Below, one piece after another: positions 2,690 to 23,871 of a stretch of 64,000 nucleotides of DNA. Origin of the DNA: Podarcis melisellensis. Its lineage: Eukaryota. A model generated the notes under the pieces. It was not told the DNA's origin. It saw nothing but the letters and a program-made list of their open reading frames with translations, and did not search any database. Position 1 is the stretch's first letter. Each line of letters opens with the position of its first letter. The DNA lies in assembly GCA_964234715.1 (NCBI GenBank), contig OZ174281.1; one strand, written 5' to 3'. The translations under genes and the position numbers were made by a program.

Positions 2690-2937
2690 TCAAAGGTGAC
2701 TATGGGATGTGGAGCTCATCTCGCTTTTCAGGCTGAGGGAGCCGGTGTTTGTCCACAGACAGCTTTCTGGGTCATGTGGCCAGCATGACTAAACCGCTTC
2801 TGGCGCAACGTAACACCGTGACAGAAACCAGAGCACACAGAAATGCCATTTACCTTTCTGCCTATTATCTACTTGCACTGGTGTGCTTCTGAATGGCTAG
2901 GATGGCAGAAGTTGGGACAGAGCAATAGGAGCTCACC

Positions 2938-3345
2938 TGTCAGGGAACTGCCATCTAAAGCGCCGGGGGCGCAAAGGCTCACTGAGGTTGAGAGAGGAGT
3001 AGCAGCGGAAGAGGGAACCAGTAGAGGGCGAGCAAGAACTCCAAGGGAAAGTGAGTCGGAGGGATGGCTCAGAGACGCTTCCAGCGAAAACAGTGGGGAG
3101 GTCTCAGGACCTCCTATAGGGACACCCACACCTCGCCGGAAACTGTCACGCCGAGAGGCCAGACGATGTGTTTCCGTTAAAGAGCTTTTATGTTGGAAAC
3201 GATTCCGAAAGCAGCCACTTTCGGATTCTACTAGTGATTGACGCAGCCATGCTGGAGGGGCTCCGTCACAGGCAGAGGTTTGAAAACCTGATCAAACTCT
3301 GAGGGACTTGCATTTTACGCACAAGCAGCTCATCGTCCCATCACA
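2938..3345 (+). repeat. 5' LTR (408 bp)
   Basis: Begins TGTCAGGG, ends CATCACA; matches 8028-8435 except T3167 vs C8257. Confidence 0.97.
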
Positions 3346-3347
3346 GC

Positions 3348-3358
3348 AATCCGAAAGT
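3348..3358 (+). promoter_or_regulatory. Self-priming primer-binding site (AATCCGAAAGT)
   Basis: Lies 2 nt after the 5' LTR; exact reverse complement of LTR 3217-3227 (ACTTTCGGATT); no TGG-starting tRNA PBS present. Confidence 0.85.
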
Positions 3359-3391
3359 CACCGAAAGCCAGCTTGTGCAGGGAGAAGCATC

Positions 3392-4411
3392 ATGAGCAAC
3401 CCAGCCAGAACCGGAGGAGCAGGAGCAGCTGGAGGGGGTCCAAGCCTGGAAGAAAGGTACAGGGCGTTGGAGATCCAGTTGGCGCTGCAAACGGCGAGGC
3501 TTGAGGAGAGGAGGGCTCAGGATGCAGAAAAGGGAAAGGAGAAAACCACCCCGCTCGCCAGAAAGGTGCCAGGATTGGTGCAGAAATTCGGGGGGGATCC
3601 CAGGAACTATCATGCCTTTAGAACAGAGATGCAATACGCTCTAAACTTGCAGTTTGATGACTTCCCCAACGAGGAATCGCGAGTGGCTTTTGTGATTGGC
3701 CATCTCGAATCCGGGGCGAAGGATTGGGTTAGACCCCTGATGGCAGCGAATAATGAGATCCTAAAGGACACGAGGAAGTTTTTTCGTGCCATGGACCTGA
3801 TGTTTTCCAGCGATATTGAGCAGGGGGTGGTGCGAAGGCAGTTAATGGCTTGCCAGCAAGGAAGCAGATCTGTCCGTGAGTACTGGACTGAGTTTACTAT
3901 GCTGATTCATAAATTGGGGTGGGACCTATCGGCGGAGCCCATCCAAATGCTTTTCGAAGAGGGGCTTTCTTCAACCGTCAAAGATGAGCTTTCCCGGGGG
4001 CCCAGGGCGGAGTCTATGGATCAGTTAACCAAATCTGCACTGTGCATAGGAGCGCGCCAGGAGGCGAGGGCTTTGGAAAAGCGGGAAGGGAAAGGAGACC
4101 GTTGGAGGGAGTTCCGCATTCCAGACATTCCAGAGCCACCTTTCCCGCCGGCAGAGCCGATGGAAGTTGGAACAGCGCGGGCGCGCGCAGTTTCAAATCC
4201 CAGTGAAGGGCGGAAGAAGGAGGGAAGGAGCGCCAAGAGATGTTATCTCTGCCAACAGCCAGGGCACTTTGCCAGAGTCTGCCCACAAAGAAAGGAATGG
4301 CAAGGGATGGCAGGAGCTGTTGGGGGAAAGGAAGAGGAAGGCAAGGAGCAAGTAAAAGCCAACGCCTGGCTGCCACCGTCGGGGCACAGCAGCCAGGCCA
4401 AAGAGCAGTGA
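3392..4411 (+). CDS. gag: Gag (339 aa from ATG 3392): coiled-coil N-terminus, retrotransposon capsid domain, CCHC zinc knuckle
   Basis: First ATG after the LTR/PBS (gcatcATGa) lies in the 3308..4411 ORF; capsid-like motifs KFGGDP and CQQGSRSVREY; knuckle CYLCQQPGHFARVC. Confidence 0.93.
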   Translation: MSNPARTGGAGAAGGGPSLEERYRALEIQLALQTARLEERRAQDAEKGKEKTTPLARKVPGLVQKFGGDPRNYHAFRTEMQYALNLQFDDFPNEESRVAFVIGHLESGAKDWVRPLMAANNEILKDTRKFFRAMDLMFSSDIEQGVVRRQLMACQQGSRSVREYWTEFTMLIHKLGWDLSAEPIQMLFEEGLSSTVKDELSRGPRAESMDQLTKSALCIGARQEARALEKREGKGDRWREFRIPDIPEPPFPPAEPMEVGTARARAVSNPSEGRKKEGRSAKRCYLCQQPGHFARVCPQRKEWQGMAGAVGGKEEEGKEQVKANAWLPPSGHSSQAKEQ

Positions 4412-7400
4412 AAGTGCCCATGCCGGAACCTCCCAGACCCGCTTTAGTGATAGAGGTGTTACTAGAACTGCCAAACGGACACCCACTAAAGATCAAGGCG
4501 CTTTTGGATTCAGGCAGCTCCTGTAATTTCATGAGTAAGGAGTTTGCAGCTGAGCACCAGATACAGACCATCCCTTTAAGTAACCCCTTGCAGGTGACTA
4601 CGATTGACGGCAGAGAGCTGTTGGGGGGAGAAGTTAGCCAACAGACTGTCCCGATGATAATGAGGGTGGCAAGGCACACCGAACAGATAGCGTTTAATGT
4701 GGCCATCCTGGGAGGAGCGCCCATCATTTTGGGGATGAGCTGGCTGGCGCTACATGATCCGCTAGTGGGCTGGCATCAGAGGGTGGTCTCCTTTGGGTCA
4801 GCGCATTGCCTAGAACACTGCAAGGAGGGGAAGGTTTCGGGAGGAGACAGAGTCACCCTAGCCGGGATGGAAGTAATGGACAAAGGGAAGGTGCCCCCGC
4901 AATACGCAGATCTGAGCAACGTATTCAGCGAAAGGGAAGCAGACAAACTGCCACCGCATAGACCCTTTGACTGTCAAATCAACCTACTCCCTGGGGCCCA
5001 ACTCCCAGTAGGCAAGCTGTACGCCATGTCAGACAGGGAGATGCAGGAGCTGAGGGAGTTCATTGACAAAAACCTGAAGCGAGGTTTCATCAGAGAGTCC
5101 CGAGCGATGGGGGGCAGCCCAGTGTTTTTTGTGGACAAAAAGAACACAGACAAACCGAGACTGGTGTGTGACTTTAGGGCCCTCAATGCAGTGTCGGAGC
5201 CCCTGGCTTTCCCTATGCCCCGAATTGATGACATTTTGACCAGAGTAAGGAAGGGAAAGATTTTTACAAAGCTGGACCTGCGGGGGGCGTACAATCTGAT
5301 ACGCATAAGGAAGGGAGATGAATGGAAGACCACCATGTTTACCCCTTTGGGAGCCTTTGAATACCTCGTTATGCCCTTCGGTCTACAAGGGGGCTCCGCG
5401 TGTTTTCAAGCTTTTATAAACCACGTTCTGGGACCTTTGCTCTACAAGAATTGTGTGGCCTTTTTAGACGACGTGTTGGTGTATTCGGAAGATGAGGAAC
5501 AGCATGTGAGGGACGTTCGAGAAGTGTTGGGCAGGCTGCAAGCCAACCAGCTGTGGGTGAAACTGGAGAAGTGCCAGTTTCATACCAAGGAGGTGGAATT
5601 CCTGGGGTACCGCTTGTCAGACAAGGGATTGGCCATGGATCCAGGCAAGGTCCAAGCGGTACTGGAATGGAAGACACCGAAGACCAAGAAGGACGTGCAA
5701 AGATTCTTGGGGTTTGGGAACTTTTATCGGAAGTTCATCAAGAACTTTGCCCACTTGACGGCGCCCATCACCGACTGCCTCAGCAGCAAGAAGAAATTTG
5801 TTTGGACGGTAGAGGCGGATCGAGCCTTTGAAGAACTGAAAAGGGCTTTCGCCTCGGAAGAACAACTTCTGCATGTGGATTTACGAAAACCCATGAGAGT
5901 GGAAACTGATGCATCCGACTGGGCGGTAGGGGCGGTCCTTCTTCAACCGGGGAGGAGTGCGTCGGAGTGGAGACCGTGTGCCTTCTTCTCGCGGAAGCTG
6001 AATAAATCCGAGAGGAATTACACGGTGTATGACAGGGAACTACTTGCCATTCACGAAGCATTCCGGAGGTGGAGACATTTATTAATTGGGGCACAACACA
6101 AGGTGCAAGTGTGCACCGACCACAAGAATTTAGAGTATTGGAGAACAGCTCGAGTGCTCAACCAACGACAAGTGAGATGGGCACAGGAATTCTCCAAATT
6201 CAACTTTGAGATTTGTTATGTGCCAGGCCCAGAAAACGTCAGGGCGGACGCGCTCTCACGCAAACCAGAGTATTGGGAAGGGGAGGGGGTGATCGAAGAG
6301 AGACATGTCATCCCTGAGGACCGCTGGGTGTGTGGGGCGGCGCTGGTGGGGCAACGAGAACTGGTAGAGGAAACGGAAAATGATGAATATGCCCAGGATA
6401 AGCTCAGAGGTCTCAGGGGGGAGGGCGAGAGCCCCGGAGGTTTTGAGGAAAGAAATGGGGCATTGTATTACAAAGGGGCACTGTATATACCCGAAGGTGA
6501 ATTGAGGGGGAGAGTACTCAAGCAGTTGCATGATAGCCCCACGGCGGGACATTTTGGACAACACAAGACCATGTGGTTGGTTACCAGGGAATTTTGGTGG
6601 CCTAAGGTGAGGGAAGATGTAAGGGAGTATGTAAGAGGGTGTGACCAATGTCAGCGAGCCAAAGGGGAAAGAAGGGCGCCGGCAGGGTTATTAGAACCAT
6701 TACCCACACCAGAACGGCCTTGGGAAGCGATATCAATAGATTTTATGACGGATCTGCCAAAGTCCAAGGGGAAAACAGCCATCATGGTAGTAGTAGACCT
6801 GTTAACTAAGATGTGCCACTTTGTAGCATGCTCACCTGCAGTCACAGCGGAAGAAACAGCGAAGTTGTTTGTAGAACACATCTTTAGGTTGCACGGGGCT
6901 CCCTTGAGGGTGATCTCAGATCGCGGCAAACAATTTACTTCCAGGTTCTGGAGGAAGCTCATGAGCTTGCTGCACGTGGAAGTCAATTTTTCAACTGCTC
7001 GGCACCCTGAAACCAACGGGCAGGCGGAAAGAGCAAATGGCATTCTTCAACAATATCTGAGGTGTTATGTCAATGACAGAGAGAACGATTGGGTCGAAAA
7101 GTTGGCGTTGGCAGAATTTGCCTACAATAATGCGGAGAATGTGTCCACAGGGATGAGTCCCTTTTTGGCTAATTACGGGTGTCACCCCAGGGCATTTCCA
7201 GGGGAAGGAGGGGAGAGATGGAGCGTCCCAGCGGCTGAACATTTTGTAGAAGAGATGGAAGCGATCCATCATCAGCTCCAGCTCAACTTAGAAAGGGCTA
7301 AGGCACAATATAAGAAGCAGGCAGACAAGAACAGAAGGGAAGGTGAAACCATAAGGGTGGGGGATCAAGTGTGGTTGTCAACCCAAGGGTTGCCGTTCAA

Positions 7401-8331
7401 AGGGGGTTGTAAGAAATTGAGGCCCAGAAGATTGGGACCCTTTGAGGTCATTCAGCAGGTCAACCCGGTAGCTTTCAAACTCCGATTACCCAACCACATG
7501 AAATTGCACCCAGTGTTCCACAGGTCGTTACTGTCACCATACAGGGGGGGACGTGAAGGGGAGTACGTCAGGGGACCAGCCTTGGAAGAGAGGGAACGCC
7601 GCAACCATGTAGCGGAAATCCTCGATTCCAGGTGGAAGGGAAATCAGGTGGAGTATTTGGTGGCGTGGGAAGGGGAACCGGAGTCAGAAAACACCTGGGT
7701 GAATGCAGAGGAAGTCAATGACGAGGTTTTAACAGAAACGTTCCACCAAAGGTTCCCGAGGAAACCTCAGCCGATAGCAAGGTTTAGGAGGGAGTATTTC
7801 GGCACCACCGATGAGGAAGAGGAAATGGAAGGGTTCGCGGAGTCGGAGTTGGAAGAGGGAGTGGACTCCGATGACGAAGATTACCGAGAGAGTAGGAACA
7901 GCAACAAGTGGAGGGAAGTGTTCGCGACGTCGGAAGACGAAGGAGGTTCTTTCAGGGGTTTTACCTCCTCACCGCCAGTAGGGGAGGAGATGGGAGGGGG
8001 TGAAGGGGGCCCTGGAGGGGAGGTGGATGTCAGGGAACTGCCATCTAAAGCGCCGGGGGCGCAAAGGCTCACTGAGGTTGAGAGAGGAGTAGCAGCGGAA
8101 GAGGGAACCAGTAGAGGGCGAGCAAGAACTCCAAGGGAAAGTGAGTCGGAGGGATGGCTCAGAGACGCTTCCAGCGAAAACAGTGGGGAGGTCTCAGGAC
8201 CTCCTATAGGGACACCCACACCTCGCCGGAAACTGTCACGCCGAGAGGCCAGACGACGTGTTTCCGTTAAAGAGCTTTTATGTTGGAAACGATTCCGAAA
8301 GCAGCCACTTTCGGATTCTACTAGTGATTGA
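4240..8331 (+). CDS. pol: Pol polyprotein (protease, RT, RNase H, integrase, chromodomain, long acidic/basic tail) in the -1 frame relative to gag; true start probably by frameshift near 4357
   Basis: PR ALLDSGS; RT VCDFRALN, KLDLRGAY, MPFGL, FLDD; RNase H TDAS, RELLAI, TDHKNL, ADALSR; IN H..H..CDQC, SIDF, SDRG, NGQAE; GPF motif; chromodomain ILDSRWKGNQVEYLVAWEG..ENTW; no internal stops. Confidence 0.96.
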   Translation: MLSLPTARALCQSLPTKKGMARDGRSCWGKGRGRQGASKSQRLAATVGAQQPGQRAVKVPMPEPPRPALVIEVLLELPNGHPLKIKALLDSGSSCNFMSKEFAAEHQIQTIPLSNPLQVTTIDGRELLGGEVSQQTVPMIMRVARHTEQIAFNVAILGGAPIILGMSWLALHDPLVGWHQRVVSFGSAHCLEHCKEGKVSGGDRVTLAGMEVMDKGKVPPQYADLSNVFSEREADKLPPHRPFDCQINLLPGAQLPVGKLYAMSDREMQELREFIDKNLKRGFIRESRAMGGSPVFFVDKKNTDKPRLVCDFRALNAVSEPLAFPMPRIDDILTRVRKGKIFTKLDLRGAYNLIRIRKGDEWKTTMFTPLGAFEYLVMPFGLQGGSACFQAFINHVLGPLLYKNCVAFLDDVLVYSEDEEQHVRDVREVLGRLQANQLWVKLEKCQFHTKEVEFLGYRLSDKGLAMDPGKVQAVLEWKTPKTKKDVQRFLGFGNFYRKFIKNFAHLTAPITDCLSSKKKFVWTVEADRAFEELKRAFASEEQLLHVDLRKPMRVETDASDWAVGAVLLQPGRSASEWRPCAFFSRKLNKSERNYTVYDRELLAIHEAFRRWRHLLIGAQHKVQVCTDHKNLEYWRTARVLNQRQVRWAQEFSKFNFEICYVPGPENVRADALSRKPEYWEGEGVIEERHVIPEDRWVCGAALVGQRELVEETENDEYAQDKLRGLRGEGESPGGFEERNGALYYKGALYIPEGELRGRVLKQLHDSPTAGHFGQHKTMWLVTREFWWPKVREDVREYVRGCDQCQRAKGERRAPAGLLEPLPTPERPWEAISIDFMTDLPKSKGKTAIMVVVDLLTKMCHFVACSPAVTAEETAKLFVEHIFRLHGAPLRVISDRGKQFTSRFWRKLMSLLHVEVNFSTARHPETNGQAERANGILQQYLRCYVNDRENDWVEKLALAEFAYNNAENVSTGMSPFLANYGCHPRAFPGEGGERWSVPAAEHFVEEMEAIHHQLQLNLERAKAQYKKQADKNRREGETIRVGDQVWLSTQGLPFKGGCKKLRPRRLGPFEVIQQVNPVAFKLRLPNHMKLHPVFHRSLLSPYRGGREGEYVRGPALEERERRNHVAEILDSRWKGNQVEYLVAWEGEPESENTWVNAEEVNDEVLTETFHQRFPRKPQPIARFRREYFGTTDEEEEMEGFAESELEEGVDSDDEDYRESRNSNKWREVFATSEDEGGSFRGFTSSPPVGEEMGGGEGGPGGEVDVRELPSKAPGAQRLTEVERGVAAEEGTSRGRARTPRESESEGWLRDASSENSGEVSGPPIGTPTPRRKLSRREARRRVSVKELLCWKRFRKQPLSDSTSD
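4364..4419 (+). promoter_or_regulatory. Predicted H-type RNA pseudoknot (-1 frameshift stimulator)
   Basis: Stem 1 GCCTGGCTGC (4364-4373) pairs with GCAGCCAGGC (4389-4398), 10 bp perfect; stem 2 GGGCAC (4382-4387) pairs with GTGCCC (4414-4419); located at the gag/pol overlap. Confidence 0.75.
8014..8027 (+). promoter_or_regulatory. Polypurine tract
   Basis: GGAGGGGAGGTGGA immediately 5' of the 3' LTR. Confidence 0.85.
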
Positions 8332-8435
8332 CGCAGCCATGCTGGAGGGGCTCCGTCACAGGCAGAGGTTTGAAAACCTGATCAAACTCTGAGGGACTTG
8401 CATTTTACGCACAAGCAGCTCATCGTCCCATCACA
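8028..8435 (+). repeat. 3' LTR (408 bp); first 304 nt overlap the pol ORF
   Basis: Direct repeat of 2938-3345; followed by TSD TCACC. Confidence 0.97.
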
Positions 8436-9156
8436 TCACCCCATCGTGCGGATTCGAACCACGATTATTCTACCAAAATTTGGCTGTGTCCATCTTCTTT
8501 GAAGGGGCTACAGTGCTTGCAAACTTTATCTAATTGCCCTTACAAAAATATTTTCGTTTTGTTAATAATTTACTTTATTGTGTAAGCAGCCCTGGTGTTG
8601 GTATTGATGAAGGTTAGGATACAGAAAGGACTATCAGTTCTACTAGGCATGATGGCTATTTCAAACTCCACTGTTGGGAGGAGTCATGCCTCTGTGTACT
8701 ATTTGCTGGGAATCACAAATGAGGTGTGTGCTGTTGCATTCCTATAGGCAGGATGCTGGACCAGACTGGTCTTTGGCCTGATACAGCTCTTACATAATTA
8801 TTCCAATCAGCTGTTTGGTACAGAGCACCACCATCCATTTTGAACAGGTCTCTGTGCGTACACTGATGCTGCAGTTGGATTAGAGGAAACTTAACAACAC
8901 ATGTAGCACTTGGTTCCATATTCCTCTAAAGATGCATGTGACCCATGGCTTAATCGGGGCATGGACAGTTTTCATTTGTTGTCTTTCATATAATTTACAT
9001 TTCTTTTTGCAAAGATTGAAGATTGCACTCTCAACAGCTCACATGCACTGAGTAAGATTTCTTCACTGGGAGGATTTCCTGAGTGTCATTACCATTTCTG
9101 CCTTCTCAGCAATCACAGAGAATCACATCTATCATTTTCTTTGTTCCTAGTGAAAG

Positions 9157-9157
<1 letters not shown>

Positions 9158-9196
<39 letters not shown>

Positions 9197-9220
9197 CTCT
9201 CCCTCTCTCCCCCTCTCCCT
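9158..9220. repeat. (CT)n microsatellite / pyrimidine tract
   Basis: Direct reading. Confidence 0.9.
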
Positions 9221-9593
9221 CACACACAAAAACAAACAATAACATACAGATGCCTTCAAATTATCACAGGCTTTTCTTATTTTAAAATCCTACGCTATTG
9301 CCATTTATATTTTTGATGCAACTTCTTTGTACATGTCAGGTGGGACTGTGTCTGATAGAAAGTGTAATTGCTTTCTCTATTCTTCAGCTTCTGTTTCAAA
9401 GAGTCTTTTAAAAAGAGAATATGTGTTGCATATTGGTCCTTGACATCTTGTAATTTTAACCCAAAAGACCCTTTCAAGCAAGCTCCTTGCATAGCGTTCA
9501 TTATTGCCTTCATTTTCAATCAGATTTTTCAGGGGATTAACTAAATCTTTCTAAAGATACCTATCGCTGTAGGTGTATGCATGTGTGCTTGTC

Positions 9594-23303: not shown

Positions 23304-23871
23304 TGTCAGTGTGGGAGTCAGCAGGAGCATGGTGGTCTCTCCCCCCACCACAACCTAGCGTCAAGTGTAGGGCTCACTAATTGTCAAGTGGCAGAGGAGC
23401 CAACCTCCACAGCACGTTGCCAGAAACAGAAAAGACAATGAAAAGTCCTTGCCATCTTCTTTTTATTCAATATTTACAGAGAGAGGCTTGTGAATGCAGC
23501 CTTTTGGAATAATGGCGTTGTCCCAACTAAATCTCCATGCTTCTTCTCTCCCACTTCAACAGCATTGCTCCCCTTTACAGTGGCCGCTTAAGGCCATCTG
23601 TCTCCAAGCCCTTTGCTCTCCTACTTTTCAGGCTCGCCGGGTTCTGAGAGATGGTGGGTCTGGAATGCTTTCTAGTGACAACATGTCAGCCAGCTGCTGC
23701 TCTGGCTCTGCCTCCTCCTCCTCTCCCATTATTTCCCAACTTTCCCCCTCATCTTTCTCTAAGCTGTGACTTCCCTCAAACCCCTGTTGTAATTCTGAAC
23801 TGTCTTTTTCTCTGGAAGGGTCAGGCTGAGGAGACAGTCTCCAACACTCCTCCTCTGCCCGGTCCCTGACA
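23304..23871 (-). mobile_element. Probable solo LTR of a second Gypsy family
   Basis: Minus strand starts TGTCAGGGAC, like the Gypsy LTR TGTCAGGGAA, and ends CTGACA; AATAAA on the minus strand near 23462-23467; no clean TSD. Confidence 0.68.

What the first reader, a model, noticed from the sequence alone, without database searches (positions are those of the whole stretch)
7792..7962. Integrase tail carries two candidate LEDGF-IBD/TND-binding motifs: a possible undescribed host-tethering system
Seen: just after the chromodomain, Pol reads REYFGTTDEEEEMEGFAESEL (about 7789-7851) and WREVFATSEDEGGSFRGF (7909-7962). Each is a Phe, then an acidic S/T linker with CK2-type sites, then [FM]xGF. Established: this layout defines the motifs by which JPO2/CDCA7L (two tandem copies), MLL1, PogZ and IWS1 bind the LEDGF/p75 integrase-binding domain and related TFIIS N-terminal domains. 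HIV IN uses LEDGF, and MLV and Ty5 integrases use short C-terminal motifs to bind host tethers. Inference: this Gypsy may mimic the host motif to integrate into transcribed chromatin. I know of no description of this in a chromovirus, but I could not search for one.
Basis: partly seen in the sequence, partly recalled or inferred. Interest (0 to 1): 0.9.

Follow-up and report, generated by a model that had tools for sequence, protein, structure and literature searches.

The report
Host-like tether motifs in lizard Gypsy integrase
A young, intact Gypsy-type retrotransposon of a wall-lizard-like genome has two short motifs in the disordered tail of its integrase that match the pattern host proteins use to dock onto the chromatin readers LEDGF/HRP2. 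The motifs are conserved across old lineages of this element, so they may steer integration into transcribed chromatin, but no binding has been tested.

Summary
Pol aa 1181-1199 (7780-7836) and 1223-1241 (7906-7962) each read aromatic-x-x-Phi-F, then an 8-9-residue D/E/S/T linker, then [M/F]xGF. They lie in a disordered tail just after the chromodomain of a full-length Ty3/Gypsy chromovirus (2938-8435; 408-bp LTRs with 1 mismatch; TSD TCACC).

Among about 195 related Pols, only four lineages carry this tail: the window family, P0046, P0045 and P0049. All four keep F + 8-9 residues + FxGF, while the flanks differ. Against P0046, synonymous sites are saturated (pS about 0.8). Even so, the motif segments change as slowly as the chromodomain (pN 0.19-0.25 against 0.185), and the spacer between them changes twice as fast (0.45). 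Shuffled tails give the pattern in 0.2% of trials or fewer.

The same clade has lost the chromodomain aromatic cage, which all 14 aligned outgroups keep, and those outgroups have short tails.

The layout meets every sequence-level criterion published for LEDGF/HRP2-type TND-interacting motifs. I found no paper describing this. Verdict: a real, selected short linear motif (about 0.9), and a LEDGF/HRP2 tether mimic at about 0.45.

The parts
2933..2937 (+). Target-site duplication TCACC, 5' copy
   Evidence: Read. The same 5 bases flank the 3' LTR at 8436-8440.
2938..3345 (+). 5' LTR, 408 bp, TG...CA ends
   Evidence: Direct repeat: 99.76% identical to 8028-8435 (1 mismatch).
3392..4411 (+). gag (capsid plus CCHC zinc knuckle)
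   Evidence: translation. Pfam Retrotrans_gag, Ty3_capsid and zf-CCHC.
4240..8331 (+). pol ORF, 1363 aa: protease, RT, RNase H, integrase (H2C2, rve, SH3_Tf2-1), chromodomain, 192-aa tail
7609..7752 (+). Chromodomain (aa 1124-1171) with a degenerate aromatic cage (N, W, E where relatives have Y/F/W, W, Y/F)
   Evidence: Pfam PF00385, E 7.8e-9. Alignment with 14 outgroup chromoviruses.
7780..7836 (+). Motif copy a, aa 1181-1199: RFRREYF, then GTTDEEEE, then MEGF. CK2-type sites at T1189 and T1190.
   Evidence: Kept in P0001-3 ([ML]EGF) and as canonical FVGF in P0046. AF2 helix at aa 1178-1186. pN 0.19 with pS saturated.
7837..7905 (+). Acidic spacer between the two copies (aa 1200-1222), fast-evolving and prone to indels
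   Evidence: pN 0.45 against P0046. 8-aa in-frame deletion in P0003.
7906..7962 (+). Motif copy b, aa 1223-1241: KWREVF, then ATSEDEGGS, then FRGF. CK2-type sites at T1230 and S1231.
   Evidence: FxGF and the upstream W-x-x-Phi-F are kept in P0001-3, P0046 (FRGF) and P0045 (FLGF); the equivalent in P0049 is FQGF. pN 0.25.
8014..8027 (+). Polypurine tract, lying inside the coding tail
   Evidence: Purine run abutting the 3' LTR. Lower pS (0.49) in aa 1242-1262 indicates nucleotide-level constraint here.
8028..8435 (+). 3' LTR. Its first 304 bases (8028-8331) encode the last 101 residues and the stop codon of Pol: an acidic part, then a basic part ending in LLCWKRF.
   Evidence: Among copies, 10 synonymous and 4 non-synonymous differences.
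8436..8440 (+). Target-site duplication TCACC, 3' copy

Best explanation
The disordered tail after the chromodomain carries two copies, related by internal duplication, of a bipartite short linear motif. Each copy has a short amphipathic helix ending in Phe, an 8-9-residue acidic and phosphorylatable linker, and FxGF. This is the layout of the TND-interacting motifs (TIM/IBM) through which JPO2, MLL1, POGZ, IWS1 and others dock onto the TFIIS-N-terminal-type domain (the 'integrase-binding domain') of the H3K36me2/3 readers LEDGF/PSIP1 and HRP2/HDGFL2. The proposed mechanism is as follows. The helix Phe and the FxGF fill the two hydrophobic pockets of the host domain. The acidic linker, possibly phosphorylated by CK2, lies on the basic patch. 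The two copies add avidity. The intasome is thereby tethered to transcribed chromatin. This would replace the methyl-lysine reading that the chromodomain of this clade appears to have lost. Shown here: the motif exists, lies in a disordered region, is under protein-level purifying selection, keeps its spacing, and co-occurs with cage loss. Inferred only: the partner, the phosphorylation, and the effect on integration sites.
For: The motif is present and unlikely by chance. Only four lineages among about 195 relatives have the long tail, and all keep [W/F]-x-x-Phi-F + 8-9 D/E/S/T + FxGF while the flanks differ. Window against L001: pS 0.76-0.90 (saturated); pN is 0.19 for copy a, 0.25 for copy b, 0.45 for the spacer and 0.185 for the chromodomain. 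Against L002, copy b has pN 0.36, the spacer 0.58 and the chromodomain 0.34. Among the 40 best-supported differences between copies in four runs, the pre-LTR tail has 7 synonymous and 8 non-synonymous, and none falls on F1187, G1198, F1199, F1228, F1238, G1240 or F1241. M1196L keeps a hydrophobic residue. AF2 gives pLDDT below 50 for nearly all of the tail and a helix at aa 1178-1186. The published TIM definition is matched feature by feature, and FxGF is reported as essential for, and particular to, LEDGF/HRP2 partners (PMC9987994). FxGF docking onto the LEDGF-type domain is conserved as far as Drosophila JASPer-JIL-1 (bioRxiv 10.1101/624023). The clade has lost 2 of 3 cage aromatics, or all 3 in P0049, whereas 14 outgroups keep all three and have short tails.
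Against: No binding test of any kind was done. No host LEDGF/HRP2 sequence could be obtained. Copy a reads [M/L]EGF in the window family, and I know of no characterised partner with that substitution. P0049 has an S/T-rich linker with no acidic residues and no CK2 sites. P0045 keeps only one good copy. AF2 predicts no helix for copy b. Profile and sequence searches of the PDB with the motif found no LEDGF-partner peptides, though such short motifs are below HMMER's reach. Cage loss and tail gain occur together in a single clade, so they count as one evolutionary event. The chromatin context of this insertion could not be determined.
Confidence: 0.45

Rival explanations
1. It is a real, selected bipartite motif, but the partner is something else. 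Candidates are a different TND (IWS1, TFIIS, Elongin A, PPP1R10, MED26), another reader of acidic-aromatic peptides (for example the TFIIH p62 PH domain or Mediator, as for acidic activation domains), or a histone surface (H2A-H2B or H3-H4), as for acidic-aromatic chaperone motifs.
For: The conservation and selection data show that a function exists, not which partner. The region can also be read as four xExF-small-x-S/T-acidic repeats, which resembles generic acidic-aromatic interaction modules. Many TIMs bind several TNDs.
Against: The invariant Gly-Phe of FxGF and the fixed 8-9-residue spacing are more specific than a generic acidic-aromatic patch requires. According to the review, FxGF is optional for other TNDs but essential for LEDGF/HRP2.
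Confidence: 0.3
2. The tail acts within the element itself. It could be an acidic autoregulatory or DNA-mimicking segment that folds back on the basic LTR-encoded C-terminus, the integrase core or the cage-less chromodomain, or it could control nuclear import, stability or multimerisation. On this view the Phe residues are intramolecular contacts.
For: The tail is acidic and then strongly basic. Both parts are under purifying selection. Long disordered integrase C-termini with regulatory roles are known, for example in Ty1 (PMC8487063, listed).
Against: AF2 of the chromodomain plus tail places the motifs in no confident contact with the chromodomain or the basic end; pLDDT is below 50 for nearly all of the tail. 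Nothing in this model explains the specific FxGF and spacing.
Confidence: 0.15
3. The conservation reflects nucleic-acid signals (PPT, LTR end, U3 promoter, RNA structure), or the tail is a neutral read-through with no protein function.
For: The tail overlaps the PPT and 304 bases of U3. The segment aa 1242-1262 next to the PPT and LTR end shows reduced pS (0.49), so cis constraint does act there.
Against: In the motif segments, synonymous sites are saturated (pS 0.83-0.90) while pN is 0.19-0.25. Indels are in frame. Third-position changes dominate among copies. This is protein-level selection, not nucleotide-level.
Confidence: 0.04

Closest known systems
Cellular LEDGF/HRP2-type TND-interacting motifs (IBMs) of JPO2/CDCA7L, MLL1/KMT2A, POGZ, IWS1, MED1, CDC7-ASK, DPF3a
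   Same: A disordered region containing a short helix ending in Phe, an 8-16-residue acidic/G/S/T linker with CK2-type sites, and FxGF. The motif comes in tandem copies, as in JPO2 (definition from PMC9987994).
   Different: Here it sits in a retrotransposon integrase, not a host transcription factor. Copy a is [M/L]EGF in the window family. One lineage (P0049) has a non-acidic S/T linker. Binding is untested.
Lentiviral integrase - LEDGF/p75
   Same: If the reading is right, the host tether and the outcome (integration in transcribed, H3K36me-marked chromatin) are the same.
   Different: HIV-1 integrase binds the IBD through a folded dimer interface of its catalytic core, not through a disordered host-like motif (PMC10854676). 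The route here would be convergent mimicry of the cellular partners.
Short C-terminal tether motifs of other integrases: MLV IN tail - BET ET domain; Ty5 IN targeting domain - Sir4; Ty1 IN - AC40
   Same: A short peptide in a disordered integrase C-terminus recruits a chromatin or transcription factor that sets the target site. In Ty5, phosphorylation controls binding. (Own knowledge; reviews PMC5053271 and PMC7459421 are listed.)
   Different: The motif chemistry and the predicted partner differ. None of these uses an F-acidic-FxGF pattern.
Canonical chromoviruses (Ty3/Gypsy with a group I chromodomain, e.g. Tf1, MAGGY)
   Same: Same Pol architecture, ending in integrase SH3 plus chromodomain.
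   Different: The aromatic cage is degenerate, and a 140-215-aa tail with the motifs follows. The 14 aligned outgroups keep the cage and end about 10-40 residues after the chromodomain.
Drosophila JIL-1 - JASPer (dP75)
   Same: An FxGF-containing peptide (DFxGFDE) in a Pro/Glu/aromatic-rich disordered segment binds the LEDGF-type domain. This shows the docking mode is ancient in animals.
   Different: It is a host kinase, not a mobile element.

Membership tests
LEDGF/HRP2-type TND-interacting motif (TIM / IBD-binding motif) | Lies in an intrinsically disordered region | tested here: met
   In the AF2 model of the chromodomain plus tail, nearly all of the tail has pLDDT below 50, while the chromodomain scores 60-76.
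LEDGF/HRP2-type TND-interacting motif (TIM / IBD-binding motif) | Short alpha-helix with a conserved Phe/Val/Leu/Ile anchor upstream of the linker | tested here: inconclusive
   A helix is predicted at aa 1178-1186, just before F1187 (copy a), but none for copy b (low confidence, 4-sequence alignment). The pattern [W/F]-x-x-Phi-F is conserved in all lineages.
LEDGF/HRP2-type TND-interacting motif (TIM / IBD-binding motif) | Flexible acidic linker of 8-16 residues rich in D/E/G/S/T | tested here: met
   The linker is 8 residues (GTTDEEEE) in copy a and 9 (ATSEDEGGS) in copy b. It is 8-9 residues in P0046, P0045 and P0049, although the P0049 linker is S/T-rich with no acidic residues.
LEDGF/HRP2-type TND-interacting motif (TIM / IBD-binding motif) | FxGF | tested here: met
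   FRGF in copy b. FVGF and FRGF in P0046, FLGF in P0045, FQGF in P0049. Copy a of the window family is [M/L]EGF, a partial match.
LEDGF/HRP2-type TND-interacting motif (TIM / IBD-binding motif) | CK2 phosphorylation of the linker raises affinity | not testable with these tools
   Only the S/T-x-x-D/E consensus can be read. It is present at T1189, T1190, T1230 and S1231 and in P0046. It is weak in P0045 and absent in P0049.
LEDGF/HRP2-type TND-interacting motif (TIM / IBD-binding motif) | Direct, Phe-dependent binding to the TND/IBD of PSIP1 or HDGFL2 | not testable with these tools
Chromovirus (Ty3/Gypsy, Metaviridae, chromodomain-bearing) | PR-RT-RNaseH-IN order with a chromodomain at the integrase C-terminus, between LTRs with a TSD | tested here: met
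   Pfam domains. LTRs and 5-bp TSD.
Chromovirus (Ty3/Gypsy, Metaviridae, chromodomain-bearing) | Group I chromodomain with three aromatic cage residues (methyl-lysine reader) | tested here: not met
   The window has N, W, E. P0046 has H, W, E; P0045 has N, W, E; P0049 has N, R, T. All 14 outgroups have aromatic, W, Y/F.

The most novel reading that the evidence does not exclude
One lineage of vertebrate chromoviruses gave up methyl-lysine reading by its chromodomain. It evolved, by internal duplication in a new disordered tail, host-mimicking TND-interacting motifs that hijack LEDGF/HRP2. An LTR retrotransposon would thus have arrived independently at the lentiviral tether, by the route the host's own transcription factors use, and would integrate into transcribed gene bodies.
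Probability: 0.4. Interest if true: 0.85.

Novelty: new variant of a known kind. Interest (0 to 1): 0.72.

Why it matters
Integrase-host tethers decide where retroelements land, and only a few are known at the level of the motif: HIV-LEDGF, MLV-BET, Ty1-AC40, Ty3-TFIIIB, Ty5-Sir4 and Tf1-Sap1. A chromovirus using a host-type TIM would be the first case of a retrotransposon mimicking the cellular LEDGF/HRP2 partners. It would show convergence with lentiviruses on the same hub. It would also offer a natural example of a switch between tethers, from a cage-bearing chromodomain to a tail motif. The family is young and very abundant in several lizard genomes. The prediction can therefore be tested directly from insertion-site maps and with two synthetic peptides, without mobilising the element.

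Tried and rejected
1. PDB sequence searches with the tail, the P0046 tail and a 25-column motif profile gave only chance hits (MHC class I, papillomavirus E1) or none. No LEDGF-partner peptide was recovered. This is uninformative for a motif this short.
2. The ESM Atlas feature search of the pre-LTR tail gave no usable hit.
3. The search for homologous proteins with the tail region of the window Pol found only three Podarcis muralis proteins. With the P0045 tail it found only P0045 itself. The look-up of encoding contigs has no record for P0003.
4. The source organisms of P0045 (ENA ERZ27260045) and P0046 (Logan ERR14657319) could not be identified.
5. Pfam on the five longest flanking ORFs gave no family, so I cannot say whether this copy sits in a gene.
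6. blastn of the element against the window found no second copy. The diverged solo LTR noted by the scan at 23560-23871 is below that threshold and was not pursued.
7. Three papers that define the motif (Tesina 2015, Sharma 2018, Cermakova 2021) are not held. The definition was taken from the 2023 review instead.
8. Complex prediction was not used. The likeliest partner, a host PSIP1/HDGFL2 TND, has no in-session reference.
9. Considered and rejected: an MLV-type ET-binding motif, which is basic/hydrophobic rather than acidic; a FFAT motif, whose positions 4-5 do not fit; and nucleoporin FG repeats, which have a different pattern. All three rejections rest on my own knowledge.

Full report
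**What is at the coordinates**

The finding lies in the Pol ORF (4240-8331, 1363 aa) of a complete Ty3/Gypsy element.
- The 408-bp LTRs are at 2938-3345 and 8028-8435. They differ at one base and have TG...CA ends.
- A 5-bp target-site duplication, TCACC, lies at 2933-2937 and 8436-8440.
- Pfam finds protease, RT, RNase H, integrase (H2C2, rve, SH3_Tf2-1) and a chromodomain at aa 1124-1171. gag carries capsid and CCHC domains.
- Pol continues for 192 residues past the chromodomain. It reads through the polypurine tract (about 8014-8027) and 304 bases into the 3' LTR.
- Both ORFs are intact and the LTRs are nearly identical, so this is a very young insertion.

**The observation**

- Copy a is aa 1181-1199 (7780-7836): RFRREYF, then GTTDEEEE, then MEGF.
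- Copy b is aa 1223-1241 (7906-7962): KWREVF, then ATSEDEGGS, then FRGF.
- S/T-x-x-D/E (CK2-type) sites are at T1189, T1190, T1230 and S1231.

Chance is a poor explanation.
- A six-frame scan of the window finds an acidic stretch followed by [FML]xGF only here.
- Composition-preserving shuffles of the tail give F-x(8,9)-FxGF in 0.17% of trials, and two loose copies in 0.01%.
- In about 208,000 residues of fetched Gypsy Pols, the strict pattern occurs only in this clade's tails, plus two non-acidic chance hits.
- The RT thumb motif FLGF at aa 489 is unrelated.

DNA alignment of the two copies aligns MEGFAESE with REVFATSE. The region therefore arose by internal duplication of an xExF-small-x-S/T-acidic unit. 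It can be read either as four such units or as two bipartite motifs.

**Conservation**

The closest proteins are three Podarcis muralis 'Gypsy retrotransposon integrase-like' entries, 68-84% identical in the tail. They keep both copies. P0003 does so despite an 8-aa in-frame deletion in the spacer and a 15-aa insertion further on.

A search of 1.84 billion representatives with Pol aa 750-1363 found only three further clusters with a long tail among the best 150:
- P0046 (67% identity; Logan contig L001)
- P0045 (57%; ENA contig L002)
- P0049/P0193/P0194 (53%; a second P. muralis family)

Their tails read as follows:
- P0046: EEQF-ATTDEEEED-FVGF and EAVF-ESTDDDSSS-FRGF
- P0045: KTVF-ESDENEDTD-FLGF, with the first copy degenerate
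- P0049: DWLF-TPTLSAST-FQGF

The flanks are unalignable between these lineages. The aromatic-x-x-Phi-F, the 8-9-residue spacing and FxGF persist. None of the other roughly 185 relatives has anything comparable after the chromodomain.

**Selection**

Nei-Gojobori counts of the window against L001 show saturated synonymous sites (pS 0.76-0.90). The non-synonymous values are:

| Region | pN vs L001 | pN vs L002 |
|---|---|---|
| Integrase C-terminal region | 0.116 | 0.226 |
| Chromodomain | 0.185 | 0.34 |
| Copy a | 0.19 | 0.566 |
| Spacer | 0.45 | 0.58 |
| Copy b | 0.25 | 0.36 |
| LTR-encoded part | 0.30 | 0.521 |

The motif segments are therefore as constrained as the chromodomain, and the constraint is on the protein. 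As an internal control, the segment abutting the PPT and LTR end (aa 1242-1262) shows reduced pS (0.49), as expected for a cis-acting signal.

The stretch is held in runs of seven coded organisms. Contigs of four runs from four of these were laid on 7400-8436, and the family is extremely abundant in two of the four. The 40 best-supported differences split as follows:
- Integrase/chromodomain: 9 synonymous, 2 non-synonymous.
- Pre-LTR tail: 7 synonymous, 8 non-synonymous.
- LTR-encoded tail: 10 synonymous, 4 non-synonymous.

None of the non-synonymous changes touches F1187, G1198, F1199, F1228, F1238, G1240 or F1241. M1196L keeps a hydrophobic residue, and G1198 changes only synonymously.

**Structure**

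AF2 of the chromodomain plus tail used a shallow alignment of only 4 sequences. It gives a moderately confident chromodomain (pLDDT 60-76) and a tail with pLDDT below 50 for nearly all residues. One short helix is predicted at aa 1178-1186, immediately before F1187. No helix is predicted for copy b. The motifs make no confident contact with the folded part.

**The chromodomain**

Following a note from the scan (s1-494228), I aligned the chromodomain with 14 outgroup chromoviruses.
- All outgroups keep the three cage aromatics (Y/F/W, W, Y/F). They end about 10-40 residues after the domain.
- The tail-bearing clade has N/H, W, E. P0003 keeps Y at the first position, and P0049 has N, R, T.
- The tails of this clade are 143-214 aa long.

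Loss of the methyl-lysine cage and gain of the motif-bearing tail coincide. This is one clade, hence one event, so it is suggestive only.

**Comparison with what is known**

The 2023 review of the TFIIS N-terminal domain (PMC9987994) defines TIMs by three features:
- an obligate alpha-helix anchoring F/V/L/I in pocket 1;
- an 8-16-residue acidic linker rich in G/S/T and phosphorylated by CK2;
- FxGF filling pocket 2.

FxGF is optional in general, but present and essential in all known LEDGF and HRP2 partners. JPO2 and others carry two copies. PMC10854676 describes the upstream part as having helical propensity and a conserved Phe. The same FxGF docking operates in Drosophila JIL-1-JASPer.

The tail motifs meet every sequence-level criterion. 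Three caveats apply: copy a is [M/L]EGF in the window family, P0049 has a non-acidic linker, and the helix for copy b is not predicted.

Six full-text searches found no paper connecting FxGF or TIMs with an LTR-retrotransposon integrase. In the review, 'viral mimicry' refers only to lentiviral integrase, which binds through a folded interface.

**Mechanism and odds**

I take it as close to established (about 0.9) that this is a functional, selected, bipartite short linear motif.

The most likely mechanism (0.45) is mimicry of host TIMs to dock the intasome on the TND of PSIP1/HDGFL2. That would tether it to H3K36me-marked transcribed chromatin, with two copies for avidity and possible CK2 control. 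It would substitute for the lost chromodomain reading.

The rivals are:
- another partner for the same peptide, such as other TNDs, readers of acidic-aromatic peptides, or histones (0.3);
- an intramolecular or regulatory role (0.15);
- cis-acting or neutral causes (0.04, largely excluded).

**Limits**

- The organisms behind P0045 and P0046 are unknown.
- Protein databases contain few vertebrate TE ORFs, so the clade's true breadth is unknown.
- The alignment tools print majority lines for the short tail alignments.
- Whether this copy lies in a gene could not be determined.

Noticed in passing
window 8028-8331: The last 101 residues of Pol are encoded inside the 3' LTR (U3). Among family copies this part shows 10 synonymous and 4 non-synonymous differences. 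Its basic end (...LLCWKR[FR]...) is kept in P0046 and P0045, so U3 is under protein-coding constraint as well as acting as a promoter.
   Followed up: partly
window 7609-7752: The chromodomain has lost the first and third aromatic cage residues (N and E in place of Y and Y/F). A second Podarcis family (P0049) has lost all three, while all 14 aligned outgroup chromoviruses keep them. This resembles the plant 'group II' state (own knowledge).
   Followed up: yes
window 7984-8045; L001: The peptide GGEGGPGGEVDVRELPS spans the PPT and the first bases of the LTR (TGTCAGGGAACTGCC). It is nearly identical in P0046, and pS is reduced there (0.49). Here cis-acting signals constrain the coding sequence.
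   Followed up: partly
window 7962-7977: Right after copy b the tail reads F-T-S-S-P-P. This resembles the Ty5 integrase targeting domain LDSSPP, recalled from memory. It is conserved as [TAN]SS[PQ]P in the P. muralis relatives but not in P0045, and is probably coincidence.
   Followed up: no
window 3346-3380: No obvious tRNA-complementary primer-binding site (no TGG...) follows the 5' LTR. The scan has a separate note proposing self-priming (s1-494172).
   Followed up: no
L001 vs window 6960-8328: Synonymous differences between the window element and P0046's contig exceed the 0.75 saturation level (pS up to 0.90) at 67% amino-acid identity. This suggests different codon or base composition, possibly a different host lineage.
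   Followed up: no
P0004: A P. muralis protein annotated as 'vomeronasal type-2 receptor 26-like' contains integrase and RNase H domains of this family (83-85% identity). It is probably a gene model that swallowed an intronic insertion, and so is one anecdotal case of a copy within a gene.
   Followed up: no
window 9160-9230: A (CT)n microsatellite merges into a degenerate C/T-rich tract downstream of the element.
   Followed up: no
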